Source: Octopus sinensis
Lineage: Eukaryota
DNA length: 64,000 nt
Reading direction: 5' to 3'
Assembly (NCBI RefSeq): GCF_006345805.1
Contig: NW_021833298.1
Location: 1 to 64,000 of the forward strand
Shown here one piece after another: positions 21,437 through 61,094 of the stretch. The notes beneath the pieces are model-generated. The model worked only from the letters and a program-made list of their open reading frames with translations, did no database searches and was not told the DNA's origin. Position numbers and translations under genes: made by a program. The number at the start of each line of letters is the position of its first letter. Positions within the stretch are counted from its first letter, which is position 1.

Positions 21437-21470
<34 letters not shown>

Positions 21471-40714: not shown

Positions 40715-40736
40715 GATTTCAACATGTATTTTTGCT
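40702..40736 (-). CDS. PARP15-like: Candidate 35-nt exon carrying the start codon (ATG at 40714-40712, MEKR)
   Basis: Strong acceptor tttttcctaattattttattttcatttgcAG; donor GAG|GTATTT; phase 1 matches 29895; context AATCATGG. Confidence 0.6.
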
Positions 40737-41339: not shown

Positions 41340-41960
41340 CTTAGTTCAAACCTCATAACAAGCACGCGGAATTCTGTTCTTGATTCGACGGTCATTCGGA
41401 ATGCTCACAGCAGCCATATTCCTACCGCTCTATGTCACGCTGGTGAGACCCATATTGGAGTACGGGATTCAAGCCTCTTCTCCTTATCTCCTCAAAGACA
41501 TACAGCATCTCGAAAGAGTCCAGAAGCTGGCTACCCGCATGGTTCTTGGTCTCAAGAATTTGTCTTATGAAGAAAGGCTGAAGACGCTCGACCTTTATTC
41601 TCTAGAAAAACGACGACGCCGTGGAGATCTCATTCTTGCTCACAACATCATAAGTGGAAAGTGTAACCTCTCGAAAGAGCTGTTCTTCACTCCTGCTCCA
41701 GAGCGTCGGCTGCGGGGTCATTCCGAAAAGCTCTATCTGCGACGATTTCATCTCAATCGAAGGAGAGGGGCTTTCTCCGCCTGGGTTGCGGATCCGTGGA
41801 ATAAGCTGCCAGACGAGATGGTGAAGATGCCGACGACCGCTCAGTTCAAAGTCTCCCTTGACCTCAAGTGGCCTGAACTCTTTACATGAACACCACCCTG
41901 TACATAACTCCATGCCCCCCTACATGGCCTTGGTTTTTGCTTTTTGAGCCAAAAAAAATA
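41340..41960 (+). mobile_element. CR1/L2-clade LINE 3' fragment
   Basis: ORF 41380-41889: LVRPILEY...LERVQKLATRMV.GL..LSYEERL..LDLYSLEKRRRRGDLI...WNKLP. Confidence 0.92.
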
Positions 41961-42039
41961 ACTAAAAGAAAGGGCTATAGAAAAGGGATTTCAACGCTTT
42001 GGGTAGAGAAGGGTTTGTTTAAAGTGACTGAGCACACAA

Positions 42040-43215
42040 GTTAGTTGATCAAGCTAATGTTTATAGAAGAAAGTGGATGACAGAATTGGAGGTGGAAGGG
42101 ATCACGAGAGAACTGGAAAAGAAAGACCAGGCAGTGGGAAAGACAAACAACAACATAAGAGATACAGCTCAAACCAAAGAAGAACCTAAAGAAAAAAATA
42201 ACAATAGTGCTACCAATAAGGAAGGGACAACTGGCACCAGTGATTTAAGTGAGGAAGATCAGAAGATTTTAGATGTGTTGCAGGAATTCATGAGTAAAGA
42301 AGTAAGAAAAAGATTGCTCTCTTTAAAGGGTACCAACAGAAGAATGTTGCTAGATATGACTAAGAAAGTAGATTCTGTTATCAGTAGGATAGATACTAAA
42401 ATACAGAAGACACTCATTGATCTCTGCCGGAGGAGTAGTAGTTACTAAAAGATTAGATATTCCACAAGGACAAATTAGAAAAAAGCAAGTGTGAAAAAGG
42501 AAATTACAAAATAAGGAGAAGACTTTAAGACAAGATCTGAGTAGAATAGAAACCTGGAAACTGAACAAGATAGGAAACACAAGATTCAAATCTTCTCTTG
42601 GGAAAAGATACTTAGTCAAAGAGAAAGAAGGATTTGGGACAATAATAAAAGATTTGAAACAATGTGTAACAACAATAGCAGGCAAGCTCTCCAGATATCA
42701 GAAAACAAACAGATCAGTATCAACAGAATAAATGACTTGAGACAGACCAGAAGAGATTTTATAACCAAATAAATAGTGGAGAAGAAAGTACTGAAGATGA
42801 GGAACCTAATGCAGAAGAAGCTAGAATGTTCTGGAGTAATATTTGGTGTAAGCCAGACAATCAAAAGGAGATGCAGGGTAGTTAAAGAAAACAAAGGAAG
42901 AAGTAGCTAGATCTAAGATTAACTAGCGCATTAATGAGTAATGTGTTAGGAAGAATGCTAAATTGGAAGGGCCCAGGACCAGAAGGCATCCAATTACCTA
43001 ATGGCCAGATATAAAAATCATTAAAAGAAGGAGAGAGTTATAAGTATCTTGGAGTATTAGGATCTGACTACAGAAATGAAAAGGAAAATTGAGAAGGAGG
43101 AGGAAGCTAATGAAGTCAAAACTAAATGGTCGGAATCTAGTGAAGGCTGTAAATACTTGGGCAGTATTTTTACTTAGCAGCTTTTGTGATAAAAAGTGAA
43201 CTAGCAAAGCTAGAC
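42040..43215 (+). mobile_element. Degraded R4/Dong-like element pieces
   Basis: NWKGPGPEGIQ, ESYKYLGVL and LNGRNLVKAVNTWAV motifs. Confidence 0.7.
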
Positions 43216-43920
43216 AGAAGAACTAGGGTCTCCCTCTTCCACAGGTACCATCCATTTTTAGTGATCAGCACTTCTTTATGCAGCTGTCCTCATTCATGTA
43301 CATCACATGTCCAAACCAAAGTAGTCTTCTCTCTTGCATACTACATTTGATATGCCCAACTTTTCTCTCAACACATTTGCACTTTGCCGTACATGTGCAC
43401 TGTTGTTGCACATCCAACGGTGCATACCACCTTAATTTCTCTCCAGTCTACACGTCTTCTGTATTCAGAGCCCATGTCTCACTACCATGGAGTATAGCCA
43501 TTCGCACACAAGCACCATATAGTCTACCTTTCACTCTGAGAGAGAGGGTCCTTTTTGTTGCTAACAGAGGTAATAGTTCTCTGAACTTCACCCACCCAAT
43601 TCTTATTCTAGAAACAATATTTTCAGAGCATCCTCCACCATTGCTAATTTGGTCACCTAGGTAACAGAAACTATCTACAACCTCAAGAGAACCTCCTGGG
43701 TTTTTGAGAGAATCTAAGTCCCGTGTGCTCTTAGTGCTTATTGTTCCTGCACATCTGCCACATACAAAGACAATTTTATCTCTTAATCTACCTGTGATTC
43801 CACTGCCCACAGTTTACACTGGATACAGTACAAGGAATTTCTTCCAACTCCTTTCCTTCTTATGGAGCGGCACCATTTACCTGAAGGAAAGAGAGTTTTA
43901 TCTTCCTTCTTACTAACAAC
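43216..43920 (-). mobile_element. RTE RT fragment
   Basis: ORF 43448-43810 motifs. Confidence 0.88.
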
Positions 43921-44477
43921 CACTTTGGTTTTAATAATAATAATAATAATAATTCTTTCATTTATTTGCCACAAGTGTGAAGGATGAGGGGAATAATACA
44001 AAGATAGACATAAAGTGCTGGGGTATACATATAATGGAATTGTAGGGAATACGACCGTATGTTGAGGTTGGTGACATAGGTAAGTCACACGGTCGCATTC
44101 CTAGCGAAATAAGATAAGCCATAAATACAATTTTATACAATGCAGTGCCAACAGAATTTAGATGAATTGACGACAAGCCGTTCCACTGTTTGAGGGATAG
44201 ATATTATTTTATTTACAATGGGTTAATGTTAGAAGGTTGTGAGGGCTAGCAAGCATTGTGTATGTGTGCGTACAACACGTGTTTGTGTCTGTGTGTTCGT
44301 GTGTGTGACAGATACAATAAGGGTGAATGCGTGTGGCATAGTAGGTACAGAGCATAGAGTTAATAATAGATTTACTGTTCATGAGGTACACGAAGTGTAA
44401 GAGCTCAATATCAAGATGTTGTGTCTCGGAGCTGAGATTAGTTGAATCACTTGTTGTGCTTATCTTTTGATATAGAT

Positions 44478-45990
44478 ATTCTTTCAGATATATATACTGC
44501 AACTGGTTTTCCGTGGTGAGATTTTCACCTAACAGCATGAGTTGAATCTATAGTTATCTTGTGTACAAGTTAAATCTTCGTAGATAGAGACGATGTTGGC
44601 GATGACGTTATGTCTGTCGCTTGGTTTACTATAGCGTCTTCATATCATGTTTTGCTTGGTTATTTTTCTCTTGATATAGATATTGTTGTGAATAGTTCAG
44701 TTCACGGTACTTCTTGACCTACTTTGCTGGCTTGGAGACTGAAAGTCTACAATACAAAGTTATAGTCCTTTGTTTTAGAAAGAGTAATGAGCTTTTAGGG
44801 GACCTTTGGCCTTTTGCCAGTCAGGGAGAGTTCGTTGTAAACACCCCTTAAAAATAAGCAGTTCAGTTTGTGAGTGGCAGTCGGCATTTGGGATTCAGGG
44901 CAAGCAGTTGGTAGTTTGGATTTAGCAGTGGCTGTTCTGCTGGTGACAGTGTACTGAGAGATGACAGGAAGACAGTCATGAGAGAGTGAACAGTTGGGAT
45001 TGTACAGCGAGTTAGTAATGGTTTGTTCTGCTGTGACAGAGAGAGATATACAGCGGATTAGGCGGCCAATAGAGATGGACTACAATGTGAGGCATTGGCT
45101 GATGTAACGGTATGTGTTAATTGTATGTTTTGATATGTGAAGAAAAAGAATCGATGTATTGAAATGTAAAAGAAATGAACATTGTGTTACAGAACTGTTA
45201 AAGAAAGAGAGAGACTCTGTTGTAGTCTTTAATGAACATTGAACTGTATATGCCTTTAATGTGATTTGAACTGTAACGTTAATGTGATTTGAAACAGAAC
45301 TGTTTTCTCCGGACTGTATATTGCATCAATCTGAACTGATATTGTACCCGGATGCTGTTGTTATATTGTATCTGCATGTTTAAATGCTTTGATCTGTTGT
45401 ATACCTATTTCTTGCATGTGCTATCTTTAAATGTACTTGATGTTGTAATAGTCATATAAACTAGTAGGTTAAATGTAAGCCAATTGCCTTCCGCTGTATT
45501 TCTTTGTGTCTCTCTCGGTTGCCTCTGTGTCTTTTCCTGCTGTTGTTGTTGTTGTCTCTCTCCTCTCTGAGTTCCGTGGCGAACATTCGACGATCGATCG
45601 GGCCTGGTCAATCATCGTCGCTTGACTTGTTGGGATCCCGGGTTCGAGTTCGGGCGACGGCAGGTGGGATTCCGTAGCAACTTTCGGGGGTCCCGTATTC
45701 TTTCAGATATATATACTGCAACTGTTTTTCCGTGGTGAGATTTTCACCTAACAGCATGAGTTGAATCTGTAGTTATCTTGTGTACAAGTTAAATCTTCGT
45801 AGATAGAGACGATGTTGGCGATGACGTTATGTCTGTCGCTTGGTTTACTATAGCGTCTTCATATCATGTTTTGCTTGGTTATTTTTCTCTTGATATAGAT
45901 ATTCTTTCAGATATATATACTGCAACTGTTTTTCCGTGGTGAGATTTTCACACTAACAGTATGAGTTGAATCTGTGAAGTTGGTGTGTAC
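44478..45990. repeat. ~204-bp direct repeats (44478-44683, 45697-45900, partial from 45901) split by an LTR-like insert
   Basis: attctttcagatatatatactgcaactg starts each unit. Confidence 0.9.
44684..45585 (+). mobile_element. LTR-like element (TGTTG...GAACA), related to 57918-58723
   Basis: TG...CA termini; long internal similarity to the second copy; ~110 bp of extra GC-rich sequence to 45696. Confidence 0.6.
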
Positions 45991-46519
45991 ATGTCTGAAG
46001 TGGACGATGGTGATGGCGACTTGAAGTTGGTACAATGATGGTGACGACGGCGGCGGAGATAGAAATTGGTTTTCTGTTGCGGGTGTACATTAGCGTCGTC
46101 GTGGCTGATCGTCTGTCGCTGTGACTGGAACATGTTGAGTAGCTCTGTGGTCAGAGGTTAGCCCTTATAAGGACTGGAACCAAAGATGCAAGTATACTGA
46201 AAACACTCCCTTATATAGAAGTAAGGTGACTCAACAGAGCCTAGGAAATGGGACCTTAACCAAAGGCCGTGATTGGTTGGCTTTGGCCAGTGGCACGAAA
46301 TAAGTAGGGAGAAAGACCGCGCTTAGATGCCAACCAATCAAAATAGTGGACACAACAAGGTTAAACTAGCCAAAGATGTTTGTAATCTCAAACGAGATCA
46401 TTCCTAATATTTCTCTCAAACAGTGAAGATAGCAATGAAGAAAACAATATTGCTACAGAATGATAAAAAAAAGGAAAGAAATTAAGTATACATGACATAC
46501 ACTGAAAAAGAAGGGACAT

Positions 46520-47545
46520 CTGCATAGCATACAAGGGTTTAAAAAAAAAGCGGCAGGGAGGATGATACAGGAAGGCCTCTAGGGATAATCAAGGAACCCC
46601 ACTGTCCGAGATTTCCATGAAACCCCTCTCCAGTTCCTTCTCTCCGACTCACAGGTCTACACTTAGAGACCATCCACTGTTGCCATTTTTGCAACTTTCA
46701 CCCACCTTTCAATAAACTCACTCGAGGACAGCCCTTCTCTCTTCACTCTCACTTTCCTTTTCAAGTGAAACTTGAGGAAGTCAATGAGAGCTCTGCCAAA
46801 GAGGAATGGATCTGTCCTCAGGCCTTTCAGCCTTGTCCACCAAACAACCTCTTTTGCCATAGCCACCAGACAAAGGAAAACTGCCTTGCCTACTTGATTG
46901 AAGGAGGACGGTAGTGCAATCATCACTACAGACTCGGCTGACAGATGGATCCGTCCCACACGTTACAGCAGCTGTTCAACATAACTCCACAAGTCAGCAA
47001 TGCCTGGACACTAAACAAGAGCATGCAAAATGGTTTCGTCACTCTGCATGCACCTCGGACAAGCCCGTCTGACAGCACATCTGAGCCTGCAGAGTTTATC
47101 TTGAACTGGTAGTGCCCCCCTCCCCAGTAGCACTGCCAGGCCAAGGACAACTGAAAATTACCCATGATAGTTCCCGACCGGAAAGTCCTCCGTAACAGAC
47201 TAGTCAGTTCATTCTCATCAGTGCACAGAGTCTCCCTGAGAACATTGTTGCACTTCCCCACCACTAATCCTGAATAAATTTTCAAGGCAGAACATCCACC
47301 AATCCCATTGTCTGACATTCTGGGTGCCAGGTGCCCACTCTCAGTCTTTTCTTCACCCTGGGCTGTTGCTCTGTGATGGAGACAAGCCTCACAAACGGAG
47401 CCCACACACACTCAGTGTCTAGGAATCCTTGCAGATGGTGTAACCTAAGAGTATGTCTGTGTATTAGGAAGGCATACCTAATCTGCCACCGAGAGGATAG
47501 TGACAACAGGCCAACCGCCTGAACAGTGGAATATACCTCTTCCAC
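46520..47545 (-). mobile_element. L1/Tx1-clade LINE 3' fragment
   Basis: CPRCMQSDETILHALV*C zinc knuckle followed by AKEVVWWTR; in-frame stops. Confidence 0.75.
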
Positions 47546-47559
47546 AAGAATTTAAATAA

Positions 47560-48420
47560 GAGAGAACTATCAGGCTAATGGTTCTTTAAAAAATAGTACT
47601 GACCTTAAATGCAGATTCTGCAACACATTTCCTGAAACAGTCAACCATCTCGTTTCAGGATGTCCTCAGTTGACACAAAATAAATACAAAAACTGCCATG
47701 ATAGGGTTAGAGTAGTATTTACATTGGATAATATGTAAACACTACAAAATCAGCACTTGCCTGCTTACTGGTATGAACATCATCCAAAACTAGTCATTAA
47801 GGATAAAAATATCACTATCCTCTGGGATTTCACAAACAGAATGATCCATGCAAATCAACCGGACATAATTATTAAAGACAGAGAAGAAAATACTTTAGGA
47901 CTAATAGATGCAAGTGTTCCCACTGATAAAAATATATCATCATCATCATCGTTTAACGTCCGTTTTCCATGCTAGCATGGGTTGGACGGTTCAACTGGGG
48001 TCTGGAAAGCCAGAAGGCTGCACCAGGCCCAGTCTGATCTGGCAGTGTTTCCACAGCTGGATGCCCTTCCTAACGCCAACCACTCCGTGAGTGTAGAGGG
48101 TGCTTTTTACGTGCCACCGGCATAGGTGCCAGGGGAGTCTGGCATCGGTCAAGAAATTTGACGAATTAAGTAAATATAAGGAGCTGTTAATTGAAATAGA
48201 AAGGATGTGGAATCTTAAAACGAGAACTGTTCCTGTTATTGTAGGTGCCCTAGGTATAATAAAAAAAAATGGGATGTCAGAAACATCTAGATAAGATCCC
48301 AGAAGAACCATGTCTCAGAGAAATCCATAAGATTGTGTTGGCAAGTACTGCTGACATCCTTAGAAAAACCCAATCAATTTAAATGTCTGTGTTGTATTAC
48401 ATGAGGCTATTTCACTACTG
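47560..48420 (+). mobile_element. R4/Dong-like restriction-like endonuclease 3' fragment with a nested RTE tail (47938-48147, - strand)
   Basis: ILWDF...ANQPDII..D...LIDASVPTDKNI resumes after the insert as KFDELSKYKELLIEIERMW...PVIVGALG. Confidence 0.88.
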
Positions 48421-48666
48421 CCCTTGCCTCTTCCCCTCCTCACGTTTTCAGTTATTCTGTAACATCTCATCTCTACTAGAAACAGAGAAACTTTCAAAAA
48501 AAACAAAGATCTAGAAAAGAGGTAACTTGAATGTGGCATCTGAAACCAGGAACAATTCCTATCATAATAGGCGCATTAGGTATGATGAAAGAACATTCAG
48601 ACAAATGCATAAGACAGAGCTGTGCTGGGGAGTGAAGTGAAAGCATGTGATAAAAATAAAACTACA

Positions 48667-48713
<47 letters not shown>

Positions 48714-48730
48714 TAATAATAATAATATTA
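48667..48730. repeat. (AAT)n tail of a second R4-like 3' fragment (~48500-48730)
   Basis: PIIIGALG-like coding sequence followed by (AAT)n. Confidence 0.7.
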
Positions 48731-50306
48731 ATGGTTTCAAATTTTGCCGTAAGGGCAGCCATTTTGGTGAGGGGGAAGGATCAATTTCATTGACCTCAGT
48801 GATGATAATAATAATAATAATTGTTGACACCCTTTTGTCTCGGGAGACAATGGAGTTGCGCATAAACTAATCCAGTCTGGTTTTTACATTTCATGTCCTC
48901 TCCAGTTTCCTCTCCAATTTTGCGCAGGCCTGGGCTAGATGTAAGAAAATCCTGGGTAGCCCAATCGTCAGGATTCCTCTCTCGACCTTGCTGATGTAGT
49001 CCAAAGGAATGCAGAGCATTACGTTTGGCACCGGCTTGGTTGCAGGAGCTGCCGGAAGAGTGTCAAGTCAAACACTAAACCACCTATGGGGCTCCACTCC
49101 GGATTTCTTTGAAAGTTGTCTCCTTTCCGTAACCCTGGATAGGGGCCCATACTGGGTACTGTCAGCCGGAGCCAGCTGAGCCCGAGACTCGTGTCAGGCA
49201 GGATCGTAACTCCCTGAAGTAGTGGAGAAAATCGCTACCCACTACCTATAATAATAATAACAACAATAATCATTTCTACTAAAGGCACAATGCCTCAAAT
49301 TTCTAGGGAGGGGAAGTAGTCGATTACATTGACCCCCAGTGCGTAACTGGTACTTAATTTATCGACCTCCAAAAGGATGAAAGGCAAAGTTGACCTCACC
49401 GGAATTTGAACTAAGAATGTCACAATGGGTGAAATACCGTTACGCATTTCATCCAGCATGCTAACGATTCTGCCAGCTCGCCACTTCATAATAATAGTAA
49501 TAATAATAAGTCACAGGCAGTGGCTCTCATGGCTTCTGATCTTAACTGATTGGAAGTGTTATCATGTACATTGTTTTGTCTTGGTATGAAAGATGGGCTA
49601 CAGCAAATATTCTGCTCAATACCAGAGATTTGCTTGTCAGTTGTTGGACCTTAACCAGTTGAGCATGTCCCTTCGTGGCTGACGATATGTGCATCTCTGA
49701 TCACGAGCAGACGTAGTGGGGGAGCATTATAGCCATGTGTTGAGAGGGATTCTTTGGGGTTTGGCTAACTCACCTTCGGAACATGGGTGTTTCATTCAAC
49801 ATCCTTAAACAACCCTTATTCAGGGACCTTTTGAGCAGGATGGGCTACTCGACCTGAAGAAAACTCTGAGCCTCCACCTGCAAGGGTCATGCAACGTTTA
49901 TCTTGATATGAGATCACCATGTCGCGCACATGTGGTTGTGATGTATGGGCCTGGTGTACCCTTATCAGACGGGTAGTCATGATGGGTATAGTGGGCTTTC
50001 TATATTTTACCCCAGTGTCACTTTGATAGCATGCACTGTTCTCTCACTGAAGAAGGAGGAGGAGGAGGAGGAGGAGAAGAAGAAGGAGGAGAAGGAAAAG
50101 AGGAAGAAGAAGAGGTGGAAAAGGAAGAAGAAAATAGTGAATAAAAAAACTAATAAATGTGTCAAGTCAAGATCCTTCATGCTTCACCAAAAATGTCAAA
50201 ATGAAAGCAAGAAAACCCGAAACAGAAAATTAATCGCAGCCAAAACAGCTGACGTTCTTTTCGAAACGCACCTCTCCAACAAAATGATGCCTAATTTTTT
50301 TTTTTT

Positions 50307-51046
50307 GGCGATCTTTCGTTTGTAGTAGCACGTTTCCGTCGATGATTTCCGTAAAAAACTTTTATTTTTTTGCATATAGGCTTGCGGGAACATTTGAAGT
50401 AATGAGAGCGAAAGAGACTAAGAGGAAGCGATTTTATGACGAGGGAATTTCTTTCTGAAGTTACCGAAGCACATATACACATACACCGAGTAAAAAATTA
50501 CACTGAATCGGCCATACATACATACACACACACATACTTACACACACACACATACATTCAGACATACATATACACATACACCGAATAAAAAATTACACTG
50601 AATCGGCCATACATACATACACACACACATACATAGATACATACACACACACACACATACATAGATACATACACATACATGCATACATACATATACATGC
50701 ATACACATACATGCATACATACATATACACATACACCGAGTAAAAAATTTCAGTTATCTCTCTCTTTCACACATTACTCTGTCTCTTCACACACACTAAC
50801 AGAAGCACTTCACTTACACAACATACTGTCTGTCTCCCACACCCCATCAAACACACACACACACACACACATGTACATCAATGCTTCGGTAACTTCAAAA
50901 AGAAATTCCCTCGTCATAAAATCGCTTCCTCTTAGTCTCTTTCGCTCTCATTACTTCAAATGTTCCCGCAAGCCTATATGTAAAAAAATAAAAGTTTTTT
51001 ACGGAAATCATCGACGGAAACGTGCTACTACAAACGAAAGATCGCC
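50307..51046. mobile_element. MITE-like element with ~165-bp inverted termini and a CA-rich interior; partial relative at ~57500-57900
   Basis: ggcgatctttcgtttgtagtagc...(50307-50471) versus its reverse complement at 50882-51046. Confidence 0.85.
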
Positions 51047-51610
51047 TTTTTTTTTTTTAATATGAAAATGGGAAATATATCCAAAATGAATGAAGTATGC
51101 AAAAAATTTTTTTAATATTTTAAAATATTTTATACTAAAAACTAAAAGAAACGGAAATATACGCGAATATTAAGAAACATGGGGAGGTAACTTACTTTAC
51201 CAGTCGTTAATGATACGAGGGGCGAAATAACCACTGAGTTATGTTTTGTCATTTATTTTCTCTGTAAACTGATAACAAAACTTGCATACGACTTAAACAT
51301 ATTTATTTCTGTCGTTTATCAGAACATCATAAAATGGGCGAAAGTAAAGCGAGTTCACACCACCGAACTAACCAGTTTGCGCAGTAAAAAAATCTGGTTA
51401 AAAGCAATCAAGAATTTACAAAACGATATTGTCGGTGTGTGGGGACCCTCTTGCCGCCCTTTTTCCGAACCAAAATAAGGGATTTGCTGCATATTAGGAA
51501 GTCGGGGTACCTGATCGCAAGCAAAAAATCGTTTTTTTATTTTGTCTTAGTGAAAATCGTGCGGGTATTAATATAGAAATATACCCTTACATACGCACGA
51601 ACGTTTATAC

Positions 51611-51799
51611 CAGTGGGTTTCAACCAGGGTTCCGCCAGTATAGTCCAGGGGTTCCGCAAGAAGTTACAAAACTGCTAAAATCAGAAGTAATTTTTAATTC
51701 ACCTGTGCATGAGACAATTAAATTATTGCACAGGGGTTCCTCGAGCCAGTGGAATGTTTCCTTGGGGTTCCGCTCCAGCAAAAAGTTTGAAAAGCACTG
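51611..51799. mobile_element. hAT-type MITE
   Basis: CAGTG...CACTG imperfect TIRs; perfect 8-bp TSD GTTTATAC at 51603-51610 and 51800-51807. Confidence 0.92.
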
Positions 51800-51918
51800 G
51801 TTTATACAGACACATAAATGAAATCACGTAAATACATATACACATACATTATATATACACACACAAAAAAACATGTACATACGTACACACACATACATAC
51901 ATACAAAAAATGCATGTA

Positions 51919-53195
51919 CGAGGGGCGTTCAATAAGTAATGCCCCTGACCCACTTCCCATAGCAGTAGAGCAACGAAACTTGGCACAGTCTTTTTCTACA
52001 TAGGAACCACCCAGAGTTACGCATTTCTCCCATCGTTTGATGTGGCTCTGGAGACCGTTTTTGTAGAAGAACCCAGCTTGGTCCTCCAACCTCAACGTGA
52101 CTTCAGAAATCAAGGCTGCATCATCTGGGAAACGCTTTCCTTTCAAAAACAACTTCATGATTGGGAAGAGGTGAAAATCAGAGGGTGCAAGGTCAGGAAA
52201 GTATGGGGAGGAGTTCATAGCCATACGCCTGTGCTTCTGATCTGGCGACAAGCGAGATGTGGACCGGAGCGTTGTCCTGCAGGAGGAGGATGCCTTTGCT
52301 GATCTTGCCCCGCCTCTTGATTTTGATAACTTCTCTTAATTTCCTCAAAAGTGAAGCATAATAGGCTCCTGCAATTGTGGTACCCTTTGCCAGGAAATCT
52401 GTCATCACTACTTTGTCCTGGTCCCAGAAGACTGTGAGCATGACCTTTCCAGCGGAGGGCTGCACCCTTGCCTTCTTTGGAGGGGGTGAGTCGCGGTGCT
52501 TCCACTGCATTGACTGGGCTTTGGTCTCTGGATCATCGTGATGGACCCAGGTTTCATCCTGTGTAATCAGTCTTATGAAATATTTTGACTCATCTTCTTG
52601 GCACATCTTCAAATTCACCCTCGAGCACTCGACGCGTTCTTGCTTCTGGAAAGGCGTGAGCAACCTGGGAATCCAACTGGCAGACACCTTTTGCATATGC
52701 AAATGGTCATGAATGATAGTTTCCACAGACCCGGTACTAATCTTGACCTCATGGGCTATTTGGCGAATAGTTATGCGTCGATCTTCCAAAATGGCAGCCT
52801 CAACTTGACGGACAGATGCCTCATCAATGGCAGAAGGGGTCGACCAGATCTGGGAGCTGTTTCCACAGAGTTCCGACCATGTTTGAATTCACGATGCCAG
52901 CGTTTTACAAGGTCATATGATGGGGCATCATTACCATAAGTTACTTTCATTTCATCAAAAGTCTCCCGTGGTGTGCGTCCTTTCAAATACAAAAACCGGA
53001 TCACTGCTCGACACTCAACAGGCTCCATTTCACACTTGACTTGGTTCAAACACCTGTAAATCAGAAACCACAATTAATTCAGTGCTGTAATTTGCCACTT
53101 CCTCTATAGAGATATAAATGATTGCACATGCAAAATTTCAGCTAGATCAAACAGCTGCAAGTGGGTCAGAGGCATTACTTATTGAACGTCCCTCG
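51919..53195 (-). mobile_element. Full-length mariner (DD34D) element, transposase disrupted by two frameshifts
   Basis: TIRs cgaggggcgttcaataagtaatgcc, TA TSD; ATG at 53028; DETW, LLQDNAPVH and PDLAPSDFHLF motifs across three ORFs. Confidence 0.97.
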
Positions 53196-53391
53196 TATAT
53201 ATTCTTTTATTTATTTCATTCATTTAACAGCGCTCATGCTGGAGCACTGCCTTTAGTCGAAGAAGTCGATCCCAGGACTTATTCTTTGTAAGCCTAGTAC
53301 TTATTCTATCGTTTTCCTTTGCTGAACCGCTAAGTAACGGGGATGTAAACACACCATCAACGGTTGTGAAGCGATGGTGGTGGGGAGACAA

Positions 53392-53428
<37 letters not shown>

Positions 53429-53432
53429 CATT

Positions 53433-53895
53433 ATTTACATTTGACGGATATTTGTTCCTCATCTTGTTTCTTGTTAACATGCTTCGGCTGATATACCCTC
53501 CAACCTTCTTCAGGTGTCTTGGGGAAATTTCAAACCTGACTTCTCATTCCTAAGGTATTTTGTTATGTTGTTGTTATTATTATTAATAAGGTCACTGCCT
53601 GAAATCGAACTCGAAATCTTGGGCTTAGTAGCCCGCGCTCTGAACCACTACGCCCGTGGCATGTGGTGTAGTGGTTCAGAGCGCGGGCTATTAACCCCAA
53701 GATTCCGGGTTCGATTCCAGGCAGTGACCATAATAATAATAACAATAACTACAATAACAACATCGAAAAATACCTTAGGAATGAGAACACAGGTTCGAAA
53801 TTCCCCAAGACACCTGAAGAAGGTTGGAGGGTATATCAGCCGAAACATGTTAACAACAAACAAAATGAGGGACAAATATCCGTCAAATGTAAATA
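53433..53895. mobile_element. Palindromic head-to-head element: tRNA-like head, (TAA)n spacer and hammerhead-like tail in each arm
   Basis: 10-nt loop at 53655-53664; tggtgtagtggtt and ggttcgattcc A/B boxes; CTGAAGA-A-GGTTG...CAGCC-GAAAC at 53814-53846. Confidence 0.85.
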
Positions 53896-53918
53896 TATAC
53901 ATAATTCCTCAATATATC

Positions 53919-55576
53919 TCTTATTATAAAAGGCAGATTTTATCTGCCTCCTTTGTCACTTATAGAAATCTACAATATAGGATTTCTTCAATTACAATTT
54001 ACCTAGCATTTTTAAGAGTAGAATGCATCGGGTCATGCCAGGTCCAGTTTTTAAAATTTAAACTCCAATTAAGCAAAATTTACAGAAAAGTCACATTCTA
54101 GTGTGTATGTCAAATGCTTTACTTAATGTGGTTTACACCACACGCATACGCACACACACAGTGTGCAACGAATAAAATGAAAGTAAATAGCGACAGAGTG
54201 ATTTGAGGAAGACTAAACTGAAAGTATTTAAACCACTACTCAAAAAATAAAAAAACACAGCAAACAGAAACAAATAAATACATAACGATTTACTCCTCAC
54301 ACAATTTCTTCAATTAGAGTTTACCTAAGATTTTTCAAAGTACTCCATTCGGTCATGCCATAATATATTTCTTTCAATTTCACCCCCAATTAAGACAAAA
54401 TTCGAGAAAACTCAATATTTTAACATTTCACTCCGAAAGCATTGATGTACATGTGTGCGTGCGTGAGTGTGTGTGTGTGAGTGTGTGTTTGATGGGTTGT
54501 GCGACACAGAAAGTGTGGTGTGTAAGTGAAGTGCTTTTGTTAGTGTGTGTAAAGAGACAGAGAGAGTGAAAGACAGAAATAACTGAACTTTTTTTATTCA
54601 CTTTTTGTAGTGAGTGACTGAGAGAGAAAAGAGAGAGAGAGGTTATGTATGTATATATGTATGTATGGCTTCAGTGACACACACACAAAAAAACACATAC
54701 CTACGTACACCTAAAGCACGCACACACACACACACAAGCGGAGCGCGAACTTCAAAATTTTGGTAGTATTAATTTGCGAGCGTACTTCTAAGCGCGCGTA
54801 ATTGAAAGTTTTCACTATGATATCATCACGTGCGAAAAAATTCGAAGGGTTTTGAACAATTGAGATACAGATGTCACGCCTGTATTGAAACCATTGCTAA
54901 GCTGCCGTAATTGCTTAATTAAGACTTTGTTTAAATTGAAAGGGGCAAATATGTGACGAGGTTGAAAAAAAATACCCCAGAAAAAAATGTACTGCTGGTA
55001 TTTATATAATTCACTACTATTTTGCTACAATGTCATGAAAAAGAAAAAATTTAGGTATGTAAATCGAATTCGCCACCCCCTTTTCCCCGTTCGCGTTTGT
55101 GTAAAAAAAATTATTATTTAAGTTTTAAAAATTATTTACTTTGTTCAAAAAATATTAATATTAATTAATTTTCAAGAATTATTTAATTTTATTCTGTAAA
55201 ATAGTAATTAATTAATTTATCTGTAAATCCGCGAGGTTGTTACTCAGGCACCTAGAATGGTAACCTTCAACTAACACTATCTCCTCCGAGACCCTGCGGC
55301 GCAAGTTGACCAAAATTGAGAGTATGGTAGAAGAAGGGTTGCTCTTCCTTCCGTAGAACATAAAATTCAAATCGGACCATGTTAACACCAAAAATTATTT
55401 ACATCAAAAAGATGCTTTTTTCTATGAAAATCCCTATTTTTTACGATTTTTTCACTGCTGTGTCGCCACTTTTCGGTGTATTTCGACCAGAAAAATGTTC
55501 ACAAAATTTTTACTTTTCAAAATTACAATTCCAGCGGGTCGAAACAAACCCGAGCAACGCCGGGCGATACTGCTAG
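53919..55576 (+). mobile_element. Non-autonomous Helitron, unit 1 of a tandem array
   Basis: 5' TCttattataaaagg; 3' cccgagcaacgccgggcgatactgCTAG. Confidence 0.85.
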
Positions 55577-56414
55577 TCTTATTATAAAAGGCAGATTTTA
55601 TCTGCCTCCCTTTGTCTCTTATAGAAATCTACAATATAGGATTTCTTCAATTACAATTTACCTAGCGTTTTTAAGAGTAGAATGCATCGGGTCATGCCAG
55701 GTCCAGTTTTTAAAATTTCAACCCCAATTAAGCAAAATTTAGAGAAAACTCACATTGTGGTGTGTAAGTCAAATGCTTTTCTTAGTGTGGGCTATAGCAC
55801 ACGCACACGCACACAAACGGAGCTAACTGTTTCACTGACGCTATCACCCTAATTTCTCCTCCTTTCTCTTTGCAAGTGTGCAACGATTAAAGTGAAAGTA
55901 ATTCACTTTTTGTAGTGAGTGACTCTTTCACTCTGCATTCCCACTTCCTATTTACACACAGACACGCAAATATATAAATAAAATTGTAAGCTAACGTGTG
56001 CGTGTGTGTGTGTGTGTGAGGGTGCGTGTGTTGTGTGTGTGCGGGTGTGCGAGTGTGTGACAGGAAAGTTTTTTAGGACGAATATAAGACCTAAAGTATA
56101 TCCAAGTAGCAGAAAGATCGCCCAAAGTGTATATAGATATTTAAATGTATTTATATATTCATCTATACACAGATGTATGTATAATGTGTGTGTATATATT
56201 TCCATAGAGGTAACCTTTCACTCCATACAAAGTTTTTTAGGACGAATATAAGATCTAAAGTTATCTCTAAGTAGCACAAAGATCGCCCAAAGTGTATATA
56301 GATATTTAAATGTATTTATATATTCATCTATACACACATGTATGTATAACGTGTGTATATATATTTCCATAGAGGTAACCATTCAACCCATACAAAGTTT
56401 TTTAGGACGAAAAT
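55577..56414 (+). mobile_element. Helitron unit 2 (same 5' end as unit 1, 3' end missing)
   Basis: Starts immediately after the CTAG; first ~190 bp nearly identical to 53919 onward. Confidence 0.8.
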
Positions 56415-57258
56415 ATTTATATATAAAAGAAAGGTTGTGTGTCTGTCTACTCCGATTTAGATTCCTAACTACTCCCACATTTTGCGATGCAGTTTAACCA
56501 AAACCGAGTATCTTATAGTCGTGATTCATATCGAGCCATTCTGGGTATTAGCGCGCGTCTACGATGAGTCTACGATTTTACAAATAATTTACCATCATAT
56601 TTTTCCATTTTAATGCATATTTTTTTTAATAAAGAGAAGTAACTCTCAAACTTCACACCAATATGCATGCTCATATGCGACGTAATATCACATCAGCAGC
56701 ATTTCCTCACACCCTCCTTGCACTTGGCGAAGGCAAAATACCAGGGGATGAAAATGGTAATATTGCCATCGATTCCATTTGTACCATTGTTAAGACGCCT
56801 TCTGATCTCAGAGATGCAGTGTTCCCAGATCTACAAGCTAATTATCAGAATATGGATTGGATTGGCAAAAAGGCTATACTGGCCCCGCGGAATAAAACTG
56901 TTCACCATATTAATGATGAAATGCTAAAACACATTCCTGAGGAAGTCTATGTATATCAGTCTATCGATACAACTCCTGACCCAGAGGACGTCATCAACTA
57001 TCCAATAGAGGTACTCAATTCCTTTGAGCACCCCGGACTACCACCACACTTTCTCAAACTTAAAGTTGGTGCCCCTATAATGTTCATCAGAAATTTGGTT
57101 CCCCCAAAACAATGCAATGGCACACGTTTGATCGTTAAGTCCTTATCTCCCACCGTAAACTTATATCAATATTTGCCTGAATAATCATCATAATTCAGTG
57201 CAATCATTAACAGTACTTTCAAGCAATTCAGCCCCGAGCAACGCCGGGCAATTCTGCT

Positions 57259-57260
<2 letters not shown>
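56415..57260 (+). mobile_element. Internally deleted Helitron with a Pif1 helicase fragment (ORF 56663-57184)
   Basis: AILAPRN...SID...GLPPH.LKLKVGAPIMFIRNL....CNGTRLIV; 5' end shared with 40181; 3' hairpin then CTGG. Confidence 0.93.

Positions 57261-57353
<93 letters not shown>
57261..57353. repeat. (TA)n microsatellite followed by a tRNA-SINE fragment (to ~57500)
   Basis: Read directly. Confidence 0.9.
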
Positions 57354-57357
<4 letters not shown>

Positions 57358-57917
57358 GACGGACTTCTTTTCGTTTCCGTCTACCAAATCCACTTACATG
57401 GCTTTGGTCGGCCCGAAACGATAGTAGAAGGCACCTGCCCAAGGTACCACGCTGTGGGACTGAACCTGGAACCATGTGGTTATGAAGGAAGCTTCTTGTA
57501 TGTAAATGTATATGAAAGATAATGGGTGTACGGGCGATCTTTCGTCTCTAGTAGACCTTTCCGTCGATTTCCGTAAAAAACTTCTTTTTTTTTACATATG
57601 GGCTTGCGGGAACTTTTGAAGTAATGAGAGCGAAAGAGACTAAGAGAAAGCGATTGTATGACGAGGGAAGTTCTTTTGAAGTTACCGTGCATGGCAAGCA
57701 TTGATGTACATGTGTGTGTATGTGTTTGATGGGGTGTGGGAGACAGAAAGTATGTTGTGTAAGTGAAGTGCTTCAGTTAGTGTGTGTGAAGAGACAGAGA
57801 GAGTAATGTGTGAAAGAGAGAGATAATTGAAATTTTTTACTCGGTTTTTGTAGTGCGTGCGTGTGTATGCATGTATGTGTATATGTATGTATGTGTGTGT
57901 GGTGTGTGTGTATGTAT

Positions 57918-58723
57918 TGTTATGGTTCAATTTAAGGACAGAGCCGGCGACCTACTTTTGGCAATGAATCCATTGTTCTGCCAGATGCGGGTTGACTAAT
58001 TAGCTCTGGGGAAACTCCCCGACCCCTTCGGGTGAATTAGGGTTCATTTGAGGGCTGCCCCCTTAAGTAAGCAGTTCAGTTGTGAGTGTGAGAGACAGTC
58101 AGGATTTGGTATTCGAGGTAAGCGGTTGGCGGTTGGATTTAGCGGTTGGCAGTTGGATTTAGCAGTGCTAAGAGAGATGAACTACAATGTAAGACATTGG
58201 CTGATGTAACGGTACGTGAATTGTTGTATTGATATGTGAATTGAGTAAAGGACTTGTCGATGTGTTATAAAGGCTGGAAAAGAAATGAGACAGTAAAAAG
58301 AACAATGTGAACTGTGTTGATATGTGTTACAGAACTGTTAAAGCAATAGAGAGACTCTGTTGTAGTCTTTAATGAACATTGAACTGTATATGCCTTTAAT
58401 GTCCTTTGAACTGTAACGTTAATGTGATTTGAAACAGAACTGTTGTCTCCGGACTGTATAATGTATTGACTTGTTGTTTAATTCGACGTGTACTCTTTAA
58501 ATGCTGTTGTTATTGCATTTGATGTGTTGTTACTTGCATGTATTTCCTCTTTGATGTATCTGATATGTATTTGATGTTGTAACAATTATAAAGTGTTATA
58601 AACTAGTACGTTAAATGTAAGCCAATTGCCTTCTTTGTGTCTCTCTCGATTGCCTGTGTCTCTTCTTGCGGCTGTTGTTGTAGTTGTTGTATCTCTCTCC
58701 TCTCCGAGTTTCCGTGGCGAACA
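57918..58723 (+). mobile_element. Solo LTR-like element (TGTTA...GAACA, 806 bp)
   Basis: TG...CA termini; homologous to 44684-45585; TSD not clean. Confidence 0.6.
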
Positions 58724-59249
58724 TTATTTCGAGTTAAAACGAAAGATTACCTTTGCCTGTTTATGTAACGGTCTGCTATGTAGAAAATAATGAGGTTGAC
58801 TCAATAGAATAATGACAGTGATCGAAGATATAGACAAAATTGCTAAGCCCAGAAGTGTCCTTACAATCCAAAAGCAACCCAAGGGATAAATCCCTTGCTC
58901 CCAATCTCCAGCCCACAAATAGCTGGTCTAGGAGAGATAACCCACCCATCCTCACTGATGCTGGACTATTTATTTTTTGATGACCAAATGACCAATAACC
59001 GTAACAGATTTCTGTCTCCCAAAAGCAATGAGTTAAATTTGTCTTCAGACAAGTCTGATGAGTCTTCTGCAAGGCTACAGTCTACGTGGGTGCAAAACCA
59101 TTGGTCACAATGACCAAACATGAGCTTTATTTCTTTAATACTTTACTGCTCTATAGGTAAGAGTGTGCTTCTTTTTACAGATATATGATACATTGACTAT
59201 CTTTCAAGCGTTGGGCCTACCGGAGGCCAAGTGGCTGAGTTCCTTTCAA

Positions 59250-60391
59250 ACTTTGAACAGTGAAACACTCGCACAATGCTTGTATGTATTAAAGTATGTA
59301 TGTGTATAAGAAAGATAATGGAGTGTACGTGTGTGTGTGTGTGTCCTGCTTTATGTATTTGAACTCACACACAAACACGCCCACCCGGCAATCTTTCGTC
59401 TCTAGTAGACCTTTCCGTCGATAGACAAAATTCTTTTTATCTAATCGTTATACATGCCTTGTCGACTGCTACTGTGCAGCCTTAATGTCTCTGTTGATGT
59501 GACGATGGTGAAATGGTAAGAAAAAGACGGGAGAGTTATAAAATGAGGAGGAGATATTCTTCTCATGAGAAAAGAGTTGCATGCAAAGGAAAAGGCTTTG
59601 AGCAAAAGGCTTCGTTTCACGTTACTACGATCGACACAGTTTTAAATGGGCAACCCCACCCGTCTAGCCTCAGGGTGGCATCACTCAGAAGCTACAACAA
59701 TGCGAGGAAGCGCATTGTGACCAGCGATATGTAGCAACATCCGACAGTCTAGTCGGTACAGTGATTTGTGTTGTTTTGAGACGAAGGGACAGTTCCGAAA
59801 GTCCAAATTCCTCTTCTCCCCCACGGCACCCGAACTCATCTTAACTTAAGAATCAACATGGCTTTGCTAAGTCAATTGATGTGTTTTCCGTTTGACTTTA
59901 AACTTTTGCTACATATCGCTAGTCACAATGCGCTTCCTCGCATTGTTGTAGCTTCTGAGTGATGCCACCCAGAGGCTAGACGGGTGGGGTTGCCCATTTA
60001 AAACTGTGCCGATCGTAGTAACGTGAAACGAAGCCTTTTGCTCAAAGCCTTTTCCTTTGCATGCAACTCTTTTCTCATGAGAAGAATATCTCCTCCTCAT
60101 TTTATAACTCTCCCGTCTTTTTCTTACCATTTCACCATCGTCACATCAACAGAGACATTAAGGCTGCACAGTAGCAGTCGACAAGGCATGTATAACGATT
60201 AGATAAAAAAAATTTTATCTATCGACGGAAAGGTCTACTAGAGACGAAAGATTGCCGGGTGGGCGTGTTTGTGTGTGAGTTCAAATACATAAAGCAGGAC
60301 ACACACACACACACACACACACGTACACTCCATTATCTTTCATATACTTTAATACATACAAGCATTGTGCGAGTGTTTCACTGTTCAAAGT
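59250..60391. repeat. Long inverted repeat: ~487-bp arms, 168-bp spacer
   Basis: 59250-59737 versus reverse complement of 59906-60391, a few substitutions and indels; mirrored ORFs 59513+ and 59909-. Confidence 0.97.
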
Positions 60392-60791
60392 CAGTCGGTG
60401 GGGGGCGGTGCGCGCTATCATGTGTTTCACTTCTCATCTCCCTCACCGACTTCAAAGCAAATGTCACCTTCCACCGGACATGAAAATAAAGGTAAATTAA
60501 AAACAGAAATTCTTTGCGGAAATTACCGAACAACCAGCTGGAATTAAAAAAAAAAAAATACTGACCAAAAATGAAATTATGCCCTCATACGTAAGTTTCA
60601 TGCCAATATTTAAGACGGGAGCGTTGTCTATCAAATGACTGCTCCAGGAGAATGAAAACAGCAAATCCGGGTAAGATTTGAACTCGAGTTGTGGTGAGGA
60701 GCATAAAAGAATTGAAAGCGACTTTGTAAAGCAATGGAGAGACGGGATCAAAGAAATTAAATTAGGAAGATGTAAAACTTAAAAAACTTAC

Positions 60792-60935
60792 CTCGTCACA
60801 GCTCTGAGCAAAAGTGAAACTTGGTGGTTTTTAAGCTGTTCATTGGTTTAACAACTTTGTATGACATCAGTGTTTCTCAGAGAAAAACACTTCTCCTCTG
60901 CCCTCTTTTAACACAATTTACTTCCACGAACACTT
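60792..60935 (-). promoter_or_regulatory. Probable promoter and non-coding first exon of the PARP gene, with IRF-E/ISRE-, CCAAT-, CRE- and GAS-like motifs
   Basis: Donor GAG|GTAAGT at 60792/60791; AGTTTCACTTTT (60821-60810), CCAAT (60846-60842), TGACATCA (60862-60869), TTCCACGAA (60922-60930). Link to the gene is inferred. Confidence 0.5.
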
Positions 60936-60985
60936 TGTGATAAAAGTTTATTATTATCATTTACAACTAACAAAATGGGAAGAAA

Positions 60986-61019
<34 letters not shown>

Positions 61020-61094
61020 CGTTTGTAGAAATATATAAATCCAGAGGAAAAGCAAACTCTAAAGATGTAGAGCAGTTAAAATTATAGTGTGTTA

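What the first reader, a model, noticed from the sequence alone, without database searches (positions are those of the whole stretch)
60792..60935. Interferon-stimulated-gene-like promoter (ISRE/IRF-E plus GAS) on an invertebrate macro-PARP
Seen within 140 bp of non-repetitive sequence: a consensus donor GAG|GTAAGT in the gene's orientation, AGTTTCACTTTT, CCAAT, TGACATCA and TTCCACGAA, with a second IRF-E-like site at 60424-60435. Established: vertebrate PARP9/14 are IRF/STAT-induced, and molluscs have IRF and STAT proteins but no recognised interferon. Inference: a conserved or convergent IRF/STAT regulon controlling this enzyme. Short motifs arise by chance, so the clustering is the only support.
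Basis: partly seen in the sequence, partly recalled or inferred. Interest (0 to 1): 0.7.

Follow-up and report, generated by a model that had tools for sequence, protein, structure and literature searches.

The report
Octopus macro-PARP leader exon, IRF-like sites
The flagged 140 bases are most likely the non-coding first exon, and perhaps the start region, of an octopus PARP14/15-like gene; interferon-factor-like DNA motifs do occur around it, but only some show more than chance support and none has been tested.

Summary
The window is octopus DNA (94-98.7% identical to an O. sinensis locus).

The splice donor at 60792 is real in context. Exon 1, a 35-nt exon 2 (40736-40702, ATG at 40714) and eleven further AG/GT-bounded exons give a macro-macro-PARP reading frame. 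An annotated O. vulgaris paralogue (P0060) aligns without a break across both 5' junctions.

About 270 bp around the donor form a 5' module found in two other PARP paralogue loci and nowhere else in 382 kb of octopus DNA.

- **Invariant in all three copies:** the donor, TGATGTCA and a 22-nt intronic element.
- **Not conserved:** the ISRE-like site is kept only in the close paralogue, whose identity (92-93%) equals background. The GAS is in neither copy, and CCAAT is lost in the distant one.

The ISRE-like site lies 18 nt from the donor, so it is probably inside the transcribed leader.

IRF-type AAGTGAAA sites are nevertheless locally enriched, both here and independently in the diverged paralogue (empirical p about 0.01).

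As assembled, the gene carries a one-base frameshift.

Verdict: the exon and module are supported, IRF input is plausible but unproven, and STAT input is unsupported.

The parts
60792..60921 (-). Non-coding leader exon (exon 1). The 3' end is firm; the 5' end and start site are unknown.
   Evidence: Consensus donor. 123/130 aligned nt identical in L002 and 94/130 in L008. The P0060 protein aligns across the exon 1-exon 2 junction. In-frame stops upstream make it untranslated here.
60786..60794 (-). Splice donor GAG|GTAAGT; last exon base 60792
   Evidence: Part of a 15-nt run (60796-60782) invariant in three paralogue copies.
60810..60821 (-). ISRE/IRF-E-like AGTTTCACTTTT (plus strand AAAAGTGAAACT), 18 nt upstream of the donor
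   Evidence: Identical in L002 (12/12). Core lost in L008 (AATTACAGTTTT, 9/12). RAAANNGAAACT occurs only 3 times in 382 kb.
60842..60846 (-). CCAAT (extended AACCAATGA, an NF-Y-like context)
   Evidence: Kept in L002, CTAAT in L008. 115 CCAAT sites in the window.
60862..60869 (.). bZIP/CRE-like TGATGTCA, one base off TGACGTCA
   Evidence: The 10-nt TGATGTCATA is invariant in all three copies, while the flanking exon sequence is about 72% identical.
60922..60930 (.). GAS-like palindrome TTCCACGAA / TTCGTGGAA
   Evidence: The homologous positions read TATTTCAAG in L002 and TTCGTAGGA in L008, neither a GAS. L002 has a different TTCTCGGAA inside the exon.
60750..60771 (-). 22-nt intronic element ATCTTCCTAATTTAATTTCTTT, 21-42 nt after the donor
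   Evidence: Longest invariant run in the three-way alignment. Found only in these three places in 382 kb. Function unknown.
60424..60435 (-). Second IRF-E-like site, GAGAAGTGAAAC on the gene strand, in intron 1
   Evidence: One of two direct repeats GTGTTTCACT (60373-60387 and 60422-60436). Lies about 10 nt beyond an intronic stretch shared with L008, which carries AAAAAGTGAAAG at the equivalent place.
60446..60531 (-). Intron-1 stretch homologous to L008 6171-6246
   Evidence: Homology ends at TTTGAAGTC(G/A)G, just before the IRF-like sites of both copies.
61047..61058 (+). Weak ISRE-like GAAAAGCAAACT, about 255 nt upstream of the donor
   Evidence: The second half-site core is CAAA rather than GAAA, so it is probably not functional.
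40737..60791 (-). Intron 1, about 20 kb and rich in transposon remains
   Evidence: Mariner-type transposase pieces at 51802-53073 and a Pif1 2B-domain fragment at 56663-57184.
40702..40736 (-). Exon 2, 35 nt, with the start codon at 40714-40712 (MEKR)
   Evidence: AG acceptor after a pyrimidine tract and a GT donor. The phase fits the next exon. Homologous to RAKIPVEIMAEKG of P0060.
10..29895 (-). Eleven coding exons: macro A (29895-29759, 29477-29250, 27267-27040); linker (22328-22277); macro B (17225-17086, 16804-16577, 15750-15522); linkers (12705-12651, 11339-11274); PARP catalytic (7136-7003, 6626-6449, 278-10)
   Evidence: All exons are bounded by AG/GT. Pfam finds Macro twice and PARP. 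The top hit P0002 is 95% identical (O. sinensis, named PARP15-like).
15669..15670 (-). One extra T (CCTTACATT) that shifts the frame in macro B exon 3
   Evidence: Absent from L001, L002, L004, L005 and from macro unit A. The spliced CDS is 1957 nt (3n+1) and stops after 380 codons.

Best explanation
Window 60792-60921 is the untranslated leader exon, probably with the adjoining start region, of a PARP14/15-like macro-macro-PARP gene on the minus strand. It splices across a 20-kb transposon-filled intron to a 35-nt exon 2 that carries the ATG.

The leader belongs to a 5' module of about 270 bp that this PARP family has kept through its duplications. The parts under evident constraint are the splice donor, a bZIP/CRE-like TGATGTCA and a 22-nt element just inside the intron.

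IRF-type sites (core AAGTGAAA) lie in and around the module, and their positions differ between paralogues. The likeliest regulatory reading is that an IRF-family factor binds these sites and raises transcription on immune stimulation. BLIMP-1/PRDM1, which reads the same core, is an alternative. The leader-exon site and the intron-1 sites would then act as elements downstream of the start site. The GAS and CCAAT strings are most likely chance.

- **Shown:** the strings, the exon chain, the paralogue conservation pattern and the motif enrichment.
- **Inferred:** use of the exon in this gene, the start-site position, and any factor binding or induction.

Sub-probabilities: leader exon of this gene 0.75; start site within about 250 bp 0.5; IRF-type sites functional 0.4; STAT/GAS functional 0.1.
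For: Exon and junction:
- Consensus donor, and a 13-exon AG/GT model that is open apart from one inserted base.
- Macro x2 plus PARP by Pfam.
- The annotated O. vulgaris protein P0060 aligns without a break over exon 1 | exon 2 | macro exon.

Module:
- Homologous copies lie in gene orientation upstream of the annotated coding sequences in L002 (O. sinensis) and L008.
- No other copy exists in 382 kb of octopus DNA, so it is not a dispersed repeat.
- No Rfam family matches.
- The invariant runs are listed.

IRF-type input:
- RAAANNGAAACT occurs 3 times in 382 kb. Two of those are this site and its L002 homologue.
- AGTGAAAC occurs 9 times in the window, 3 of them within 60375-60820.
- L008 independently has GAAAGTGAAA 284 nt upstream of its donor, AAGTGAAA 528 nt downstream, and AAAAAGTGAAAG next to the shared intronic stretch.
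- Only 1.1% of 1-kb windows in 382 kb hold two or more AAGTGAAA, and both modules are among them.
- In L002 a 12-nt insertion adds a further GAAACT half-site next to the site.

Background from the literature:
- Oyster CgIRF2 and CgIRF8 activate mammalian ISRE and IFN-beta reporters (PMC5557890).
- PARP14 is listed among antiviral effector genes differentially expressed in virus-challenged oysters (PMC12803857).
- The figure legends of an O. vulgaris haemocyte transcriptome paper list IRF3, IRF7 and Stat-1 among pathway components (PMC4199593).
Against: - No transcript, CAGE or expression data were reachable, so use of exon 1 rests on a paralogue's annotation whose own evidence base is unknown.
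- The leader-exon ISRE-like site is not conserved beyond a 95%-identical copy whose background identity is already 92-93%.
- In L008 and (inferred from the protein) in P0060 that site is gone.
- Its first half-site is AAAA, not GAAA.
- Its place, 18 nt from the donor, is unusual for an ISRE.
- The AAGTGAAA enrichment test was framed after seeing the data, and only one truly independent paralogue was available.
- An AG lies at the 5' edge of the highly conserved block, so the exon could be internal with the promoter elsewhere.
- The reading frame is broken in this assembly, so the locus could be a decaying copy.
Confidence: 0.45

Rival explanations
1. The segment is the leader exon and 5' module, but the immune-looking motifs are incidental. 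Expression would then be driven by other factors, for example a bZIP protein on the invariant TGATGTCA or whatever reads the 22-nt intronic element. The ISRE-like, GAS and CCAAT strings are chance products of AT-rich sequence.
For: - Only TGATGTCA, the donor and the intronic 22-mer are invariant.
- ISRE-like, CCAAT and GAS each fail in at least one paralogue.
- Window-wide counts of the ISRE core and of GAS are at expectation.
- ISRE-like plus GAS pairs occur at five loci in 64 kb.
- Identity over the ISRE in L008 (9/12) equals the exon average (94/130).
Against: - The strict ISRE-like string is very rare (3 in 382 kb), yet it sits in the independently validated module.
- AAGTGAAA is enriched around the module of the diverged paralogue as well (p about 0.01).
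- Vertebrate relatives of this gene are IFN-induced, and mollusc IRFs read ISRE (PMC5557890).
Confidence: 0.35
2. The block is an internal 5'-UTR exon. The true promoter lies further upstream, possibly outside the window, so none of the listed motifs is promoter sequence.
For: - An AG dinucleotide sits at the 5' edge of the highly conserved block in the window (60922-60921), and one base away in L002.
- Identity drops upstream of that point: 39/61 in L008 and 30/48 with a 16-nt gap in L002.
- P0060 has 25 further N-terminal residues with no counterpart in the window's translation.
Against: - The AG is not in register between copies, and the window lacks a pyrimidine tract there.
- Homology, though weaker, continues about 65 nt upstream, including an invariant GTTGTAAA.
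- No upstream exon candidate was found in 61-64 kb, which is microsatellite and retroelement debris.
Confidence: 0.2
3. The block is not an exon of this gene at all. It would be a leftover of segmental duplication that happens to carry a consensus donor, with the gene's transcripts starting elsewhere. Alternatively the gene is a dead copy.
For: - The frame is broken by one inserted T.
- The O. sinensis model for the orthologous locus (P0002) starts only inside macro B.
- No exon 2 homologue was found in L001-L009.
Against: - The P0060 alignment runs over both junctions.
- The 15-nt donor run is invariant at about 72% background identity.
- The module is always in gene orientation upstream of the annotated PARP-family coding sequence.
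- Exon 2 has an acceptor and so needs an upstream exon.
Confidence: 0.1

Closest known systems
Interferon-inducible promoters of vertebrate PARP9/DTX3L and PARP14 (ISRE/GAS-driven ISGs)
   Same: The gene is a macro-domain mono-ART-type PARP (Macro x2 plus PARP). An IRF-E/ISRE-like string and a TTCNNNGAA string lie at its 5' end. PARP14's links to IFN signalling are reviewed in PMC13224862.
   Different: No interferon is recognised in cephalopods. The ISRE-like site is probably inside the leader exon, and its first half-site is AAAA. The GAS is not conserved in any paralogue. No induction data exist. No divergent partner gene is visible in 61-64 kb.
Oyster IRF / ISRE axis (CgIRF2 and CgIRF8 activating ISRE and IFN-beta reporters; CgIFNLP pathway)
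   Same: Mollusc IRFs recognise the vertebrate ISRE/PRDI core (PMC5557890; PMC8218723). PARP14 is listed among antiviral effector genes differentially expressed in virus-challenged oysters (PMC12803857).
   Different: Those studies used mammalian reporter elements, not native mollusc promoters. Nothing is known for cephalopod IRFs or for this gene.
PRDI-type element of the IFN-beta enhancer and the PRDM1/BLIMP-1 site (AAGTGAAAGT core; from general knowledge)
   Same: The sites here share AAGTGAAA(C). The intronic one reads GAGAAGTGAAAC, close to PRDI GAGAAGTGAAAGTG.
   Different: They are isolated or loosely spaced rather than a compact enhanceosome. A repressor reading (PRDM1) is as compatible with the sequence as an activator reading.
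CRE/ATF bZIP site (TGACGTCA) in core promoters
   Same: TGATGTCA differs by one base and is the only listed motif invariant in all three module copies.
   Different: The central CG is absent. Its position relative to the start site is unknown, and it may lie in the transcribed leader.

Membership tests
ISRE / IRF-E | Two GAAA half-sites two bases apart (GAAANNGAAACT); minimal IRF core AANNGAAA | tested here: inconclusive
   The site reads AAAAGTGAAACT. The second half-site and the ACT tail are perfect, but the first half-site is AAAA. The strict consensus has 0 matches in the window, while AANNGAAA is met.
ISRE / IRF-E | Lies in the proximal promoter, usually within about 200 bp upstream of the start site | not testable with these tools
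   The start site is unknown. Geometry (18 nt from the donor) and the P0060 alignment suggest the site is transcribed.
ISRE / IRF-E | Conserved at the homologous position in related promoters | tested here: not met
   12/12 in L002, but there background identity is 92-95%. In L008 it reads AATTACAGTTTT with the GAAAC core lost. The P0060 peptide EQHPNL cannot encode it (inference).
ISRE / IRF-E | IRF-type sites enriched around related promoters, allowing for turnover | tested here: met
   Two or more AAGTGAAA per kb occur in 1.1% of windows across 382 kb, and both the window and L008 modules qualify. L008 has GAAAGTGAAA at -284. The test was framed after seeing the data and has one independent paralogue.
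ISRE / IRF-E | Bound by IRF/ISGF3 and confers induction | not testable with these tools
   Needs EMSA, ChIP, reporter and induction experiments.
GAS (STAT site) | Palindrome TTCNNNGAA | tested here: met
   TTCCACGAA at 60922-60930. There are 15 such sites in the window against 20.6 expected.
GAS (STAT site) | Conserved in related promoters | tested here: not met
   The homologous positions read TATTTCAAG in L002 and TTCGTAGGA in L008.
NF-Y CCAAT box | CCAAT pentamer, typically 60-100 bp upstream of the start site, and conserved | tested here: not met
   It reads CTAAT in L008. It is only 50 nt upstream of the donor, so a start site 60-100 nt downstream of it would fall in the intron.
Macro-PARP (PARP9/14/15 type) | One or more macro domains followed by a PARP catalytic domain in one gene | tested here: met
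   Pfam finds Macro (two stretches, E 4.9e-38) and PARP (E 4.6e-19) on the spliced model. Octopus relatives are named PARP14-like or PARP15-like by NCBI.
Macro-PARP (PARP9/14/15 type) | Intact reading frame joining the macro and PARP domains | tested here: not met
   One extra T at 15669-15670 makes the CDS 3n+1 and stops translation in macro B. It is absent from five homologous sequences. It could be an assembly error.
First exon / promoter of the gene | Donor used and spliced to the first coding exon | tested here: inconclusive
   Supported by the phase-compatible model and the P0060 alignment over the junctions. No transcript of this locus could be examined.
First exon / promoter of the gene | Mapped transcription start site | not testable with these tools
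   No CAGE, RACE or RNA-seq access. 

The most novel reading that the evidence does not exclude
An IRF-to-macro-PARP regulatory link may exist in cephalopods despite the lack of a recognised interferon. On this reading, several octopus PARP14/15-like paralogues share a duplicated leader-exon module, and IRF-type sites around it are maintained by turnover rather than positional conservation. That would place macro-PARPs in an ancestral IRF regulon that vertebrate interferon later took over.
Probability: 0.3. Interest if true: 0.6.

Novelty: new member of a known kind. Interest (0 to 1): 0.35.

Why it matters
If the IRF-type sites work, this would be a native cephalopod cis-element tying an ISG-type effector to IRF control. 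That would support the view that the IRF-driven antiviral gene set predates interferon itself.

It would also give a concrete, short DNA target (60810-60821, 60424-60435 and their L008 counterparts) for binding and reporter tests. Such targets are scarce for molluscs, where the work I found (PMC5557890) used mammalian reporter elements.

If the sites are inert, the result is still useful for annotation. It defines a shared leader exon and a 20-kb first intron for a gene family whose public models are truncated.

Tried and rejected
- **Dispersed repeat or transposon promoter:** rejected. Only three copies exist in 382 kb, each in gene orientation upstream of an annotated PARP-family coding sequence.
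- **Non-coding RNA gene:** rejected. No Rfam match reaches a gathering score; the only hits are microsatellite-driven miRNA look-alikes.
- **Conservation in L002 as evidence for the ISRE:** rejected. The paralogues are 92-93% identical even in introns.
- **Exon 2 homologue in other loci:** none found by DNA or peptide pattern.
- **DNA of the P0060 and P0066 loci**, which would show a further paralogous leader: not delivered because the gene ranges exceed 100 kb. P0060 exons are not in any fetched locus.
- **Orthologous promoter from O. bimaculoides or more distant octopods:** The annotated relatives are too far downstream for a 10-kb flank.
- **Literature:** searches found no paper on cephalopod PARP14 regulation.
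- **Bacterial promoter/terminator scan:** not used, because it does not apply to this genome.

Full report
**What is there.** The window is octopus nuclear DNA. It aligns to an O. sinensis chromosome segment (L001) at 98.7% over 9.6 kb and at about 94-96% elsewhere. Its PARP exons are 95% identical to an O. sinensis protein named PARP15-like (P0002). Read on the minus strand, which is the gene's strand, the order is:
- TTCGTGGAA (60930-60922)
- TGATGTCA (60869-60862)
- CCAAT (60846-60842)
- AGTTTCACTTTT (60821-60810)
- GAG|GTAAGT, with the exon ending at 60792

The second IRF-E-like string GTTTCACTTCTC is at 60424-60435. The 60331-60980 segment is single-copy and lies between two (CA)n microsatellites.

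**The gene.** Downstream on the minus strand I could chain 13 exons, every one bounded by AG and GT.
- Exon 2 is 40736-40702, only 35 nt, with ATG at 40714 in a good context.
- Three exons form macro domain A (29895-27040), followed by a linker.
- Three exons form macro domain B (17225-15522), followed by two linkers.
- Three exons form the PARP catalytic domain, ending with a stop at position 10.

Pfam finds Macro twice and PARP. The spliced coding sequence is 1957 nt, one more than a multiple of three. The cause is a single extra T at 15669-15670, which is absent from the O. sinensis orthologue, from three paralogues and from the window's own macro unit A. As assembled, translation stops inside macro B. 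This is either an assembly error or a recent inactivating change.

**Is 60792 really a used donor?** Exon 2 has an acceptor after a pyrimidine tract, so it needs an upstream exon. The best evidence comes from an annotated O. vulgaris macro protein, P0060. Its N-terminal part NIYMKTEQHPNLARVVT|RAKIPVEIMAEKG|TES aligns without a break to the conceptual translation of window exon 1 | exon 2 | macro exon (NEQLKNHQVSLLLRAVT|RAKIHVEIMEKR|DTPS). So a paralogue is annotated with the same exon chain. In the window, stop codons precede the junction in that frame, so exon 1 is untranslated. I could not see the DNA of the P0060 locus because its gene range is 225 kb. I also could not reach any transcript data, so use of the exon in this gene remains inferred.

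**A conserved 5' module.** The region around the donor recurs in two other loci, and in both it lies in gene orientation upstream of the annotated coding sequence.
- **L002 (O. sinensis):** the copy lies 4.6 kb upstream of the P0057 macro gene. Identity is 189/199 aligned nt, with two indels.
- **L008:** the copy lies 5.5 kb upstream of the P0006 PARP gene, with an assembly gap in between. Identity is about 72%.

No other copy exists in 382 kb of octopus DNA sampled (window plus L001-L009), so this is not a dispersed repeat. No Rfam family matches.

In the three-way alignment the invariant runs are:
- a 22-nt intronic element ATCTTCCTAATTTAATTTCTTT (60771-60750)
- 15 nt spanning the donor
- TGATGTCATA (60869-60860)
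- CTTTACAAA
- GTTGTAAA

The GAS is absent in both copies. CCAAT becomes CTAAT in L008. The ISRE-like string is identical in L002 but reads AATTACAGTTTT in L008. The L002 identity carries no weight, because these paralogues are 92-93% identical even through introns. The P0060 peptide over that stretch (EQHPNL) cannot be encoded by the ISRE-like string either.

**Geometry.** The ISRE-like site ends 18 nt before the donor, and CCAAT ends 50 nt before it. Unless exon 1 is only a few bases long, these motifs lie inside the transcribed leader rather than upstream of the start site. The highly conserved block is about 130 nt, which is a plausible leader length. The start site could be near 60921 or up to about 61000. 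An AG at the block's 5' edge keeps open the possibility of an internal exon with a promoter elsewhere. However, that AG is out of register between copies and lacks a pyrimidine tract in the window.

**Chance.**
- The core AAANNGAAACT occurs once in the window against 1.04 expected, so only its position counts.
- GAS strings are at expectation (15 against 20.6).
- ISRE-like sites with at most one mismatch pair with a GAS within 140 bp at five separate loci in the window.
- The four-motif cluster is unique (0 of 200 shuffles), but the motif set was chosen after the fact.
The chance of such a site falling in the independently validated module is therefore a few in a thousand before allowing for the many motif families a reader might have accepted.

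**An unexpected point in favour of IRF-type input.**
- The 8-mer AGTGAAAC occurs nine times in the window, three of them within 60375-60820.
- The two intronic copies are a 15-nt direct repeat 49 nt apart.
- The diverged paralogue L008, which lost the leader-exon site, has three sites of its own: a canonical GAAAGTGAAA 284 nt upstream of its donor, another AAGTGAAA 528 nt downstream, and AAAAAGTGAAAG immediately after an intronic stretch homologous to window 60531-60446. In the window the second IRF-E-like site sits about 10 nt beyond that same stretch.
- Across all 382 kb, only 1.1% of 1-kb windows contain two or more AAGTGAAA. The modules of the window and of L008 are two of the seven such regions.
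- In L002 a 12-nt insertion adds another GAAACT half-site beside the conserved one.

This looks like site turnover around a shared module. It rests on one independent paralogue and on a test framed after seeing the data.

**Context from the literature.**
- Oyster CgIRF2 and CgIRF8 activate mammalian ISRE and IFN-beta reporters (PMC5557890).
- An IFN-like pathway through cGAS/STING-TBK1-IRF has been described in oyster (PMC8218723).
- PARP14 is listed among antiviral effector genes differentially expressed in virus-challenged oysters (PMC12803857).
- The figure legends of an O. vulgaris haemocyte transcriptome paper list IRF3, IRF7 and Stat-1 among pathway components (PMC4199593).
- I found no paper on cephalopod PARP14 regulation.

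The idea is thus an extension of a known theme, not a new kind of system.

**Verdict.**
- The exon, the long first intron and the macro-PARP identity hold up.
- The segment is part of a conserved 5' module.
- The specific ISRE-plus-GAS promoter picture does not hold. The GAS and CCAAT are most likely chance, the ISRE-like site is probably in the leader and is not positionally conserved, and the only listed motif under clear constraint is the bZIP-like TGATGTCA.
- IRF-type (or PRDM1-type) regulation through scattered AAGTGAAA sites is plausible, at roughly 0.4. STAT input is unlikely, at about 0.1.

Start-site mapping and an induction experiment would settle it.

Noticed in passing
window 15669-15670 (minus-strand exon 15750-15522): A single extra T shifts the frame in the third exon of macro domain B and stops translation before the PARP domain. 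The O. sinensis orthologue, three paralogues and the window's own macro unit A lack it. It is either an assembly error or a recent pseudogenising change.
   Followed up: partly
window 60750-60771: A 22-nt intronic element ATCTTCCTAATTTAATTTCTTT lies 21-42 nt after the leader's donor. It is invariant in all three paralogue copies at about 72% background identity, which makes it better conserved than the exon. Its function is unknown; a splicing or downstream regulatory element is possible.
   Followed up: partly
window 15396-17250 and 26956-29917: The macro-domain unit (three exons plus introns) is tandemly duplicated inside the gene. The O. sinensis counterpart of unit B is 93.5% identical to the window's unit A at the DNA level, so the duplication is recent.
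   Followed up: partly
window 32429-38792: A 6.4-kb satellite of 38 copies of a 166-bp unit (93% matches) with very strong GC skew (about +0.6) sits in intron 2 of the PARP gene.
   Followed up: no
window 9712-11162: A 1.45-kb (AAT)n microsatellite lies within an intron. GC content drops to 18.5% there.
   Followed up: no
window 51802-53073 and 56663-57184: Intron 1 carries mariner/Mos1-type transposase remains (HTH_48 and the partial DDE domain) and a Pif1 helicase 2B-domain fragment suggestive of a Helitron. Several reverse-transcriptase fragments lie elsewhere (3878-4987, 26003-26368).
   Followed up: partly
window 61094-61189: A perfect 18-nt inverted repeat GGCCGGTTTATGGGGTTA ... TAACCCCATAAACCGGCC has arms about 60 nt apart and lies about 300 bp upstream of the leader. 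It is unique in the 382 kb sampled. It could be a small hairpin element or a MITE remnant.
   Followed up: partly
L007 (O. sinensis CM016859.1, 206.66 Mb): A 1275-residue gene model with PARP14-type RRM domains, Macro and PARP spans this locus and contains the short PARP15-like model P0004. The family therefore includes full PARP14-like members, and many public models in these clusters are fragments.
   Followed up: no
L009 12851-13301: Six copies of AGTGAAAC fall within 450 bp at the 3' end of the P0009 PARP gene, probably a short tandem array. It was not examined.
   Followed up: no
L002 5201-5209: The close paralogue has its own GAS-like TTCTCGGAA inside the leader exon, where the window reads TTCTCTGAG. 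This shows how easily this palindrome comes and goes.
   Followed up: yes
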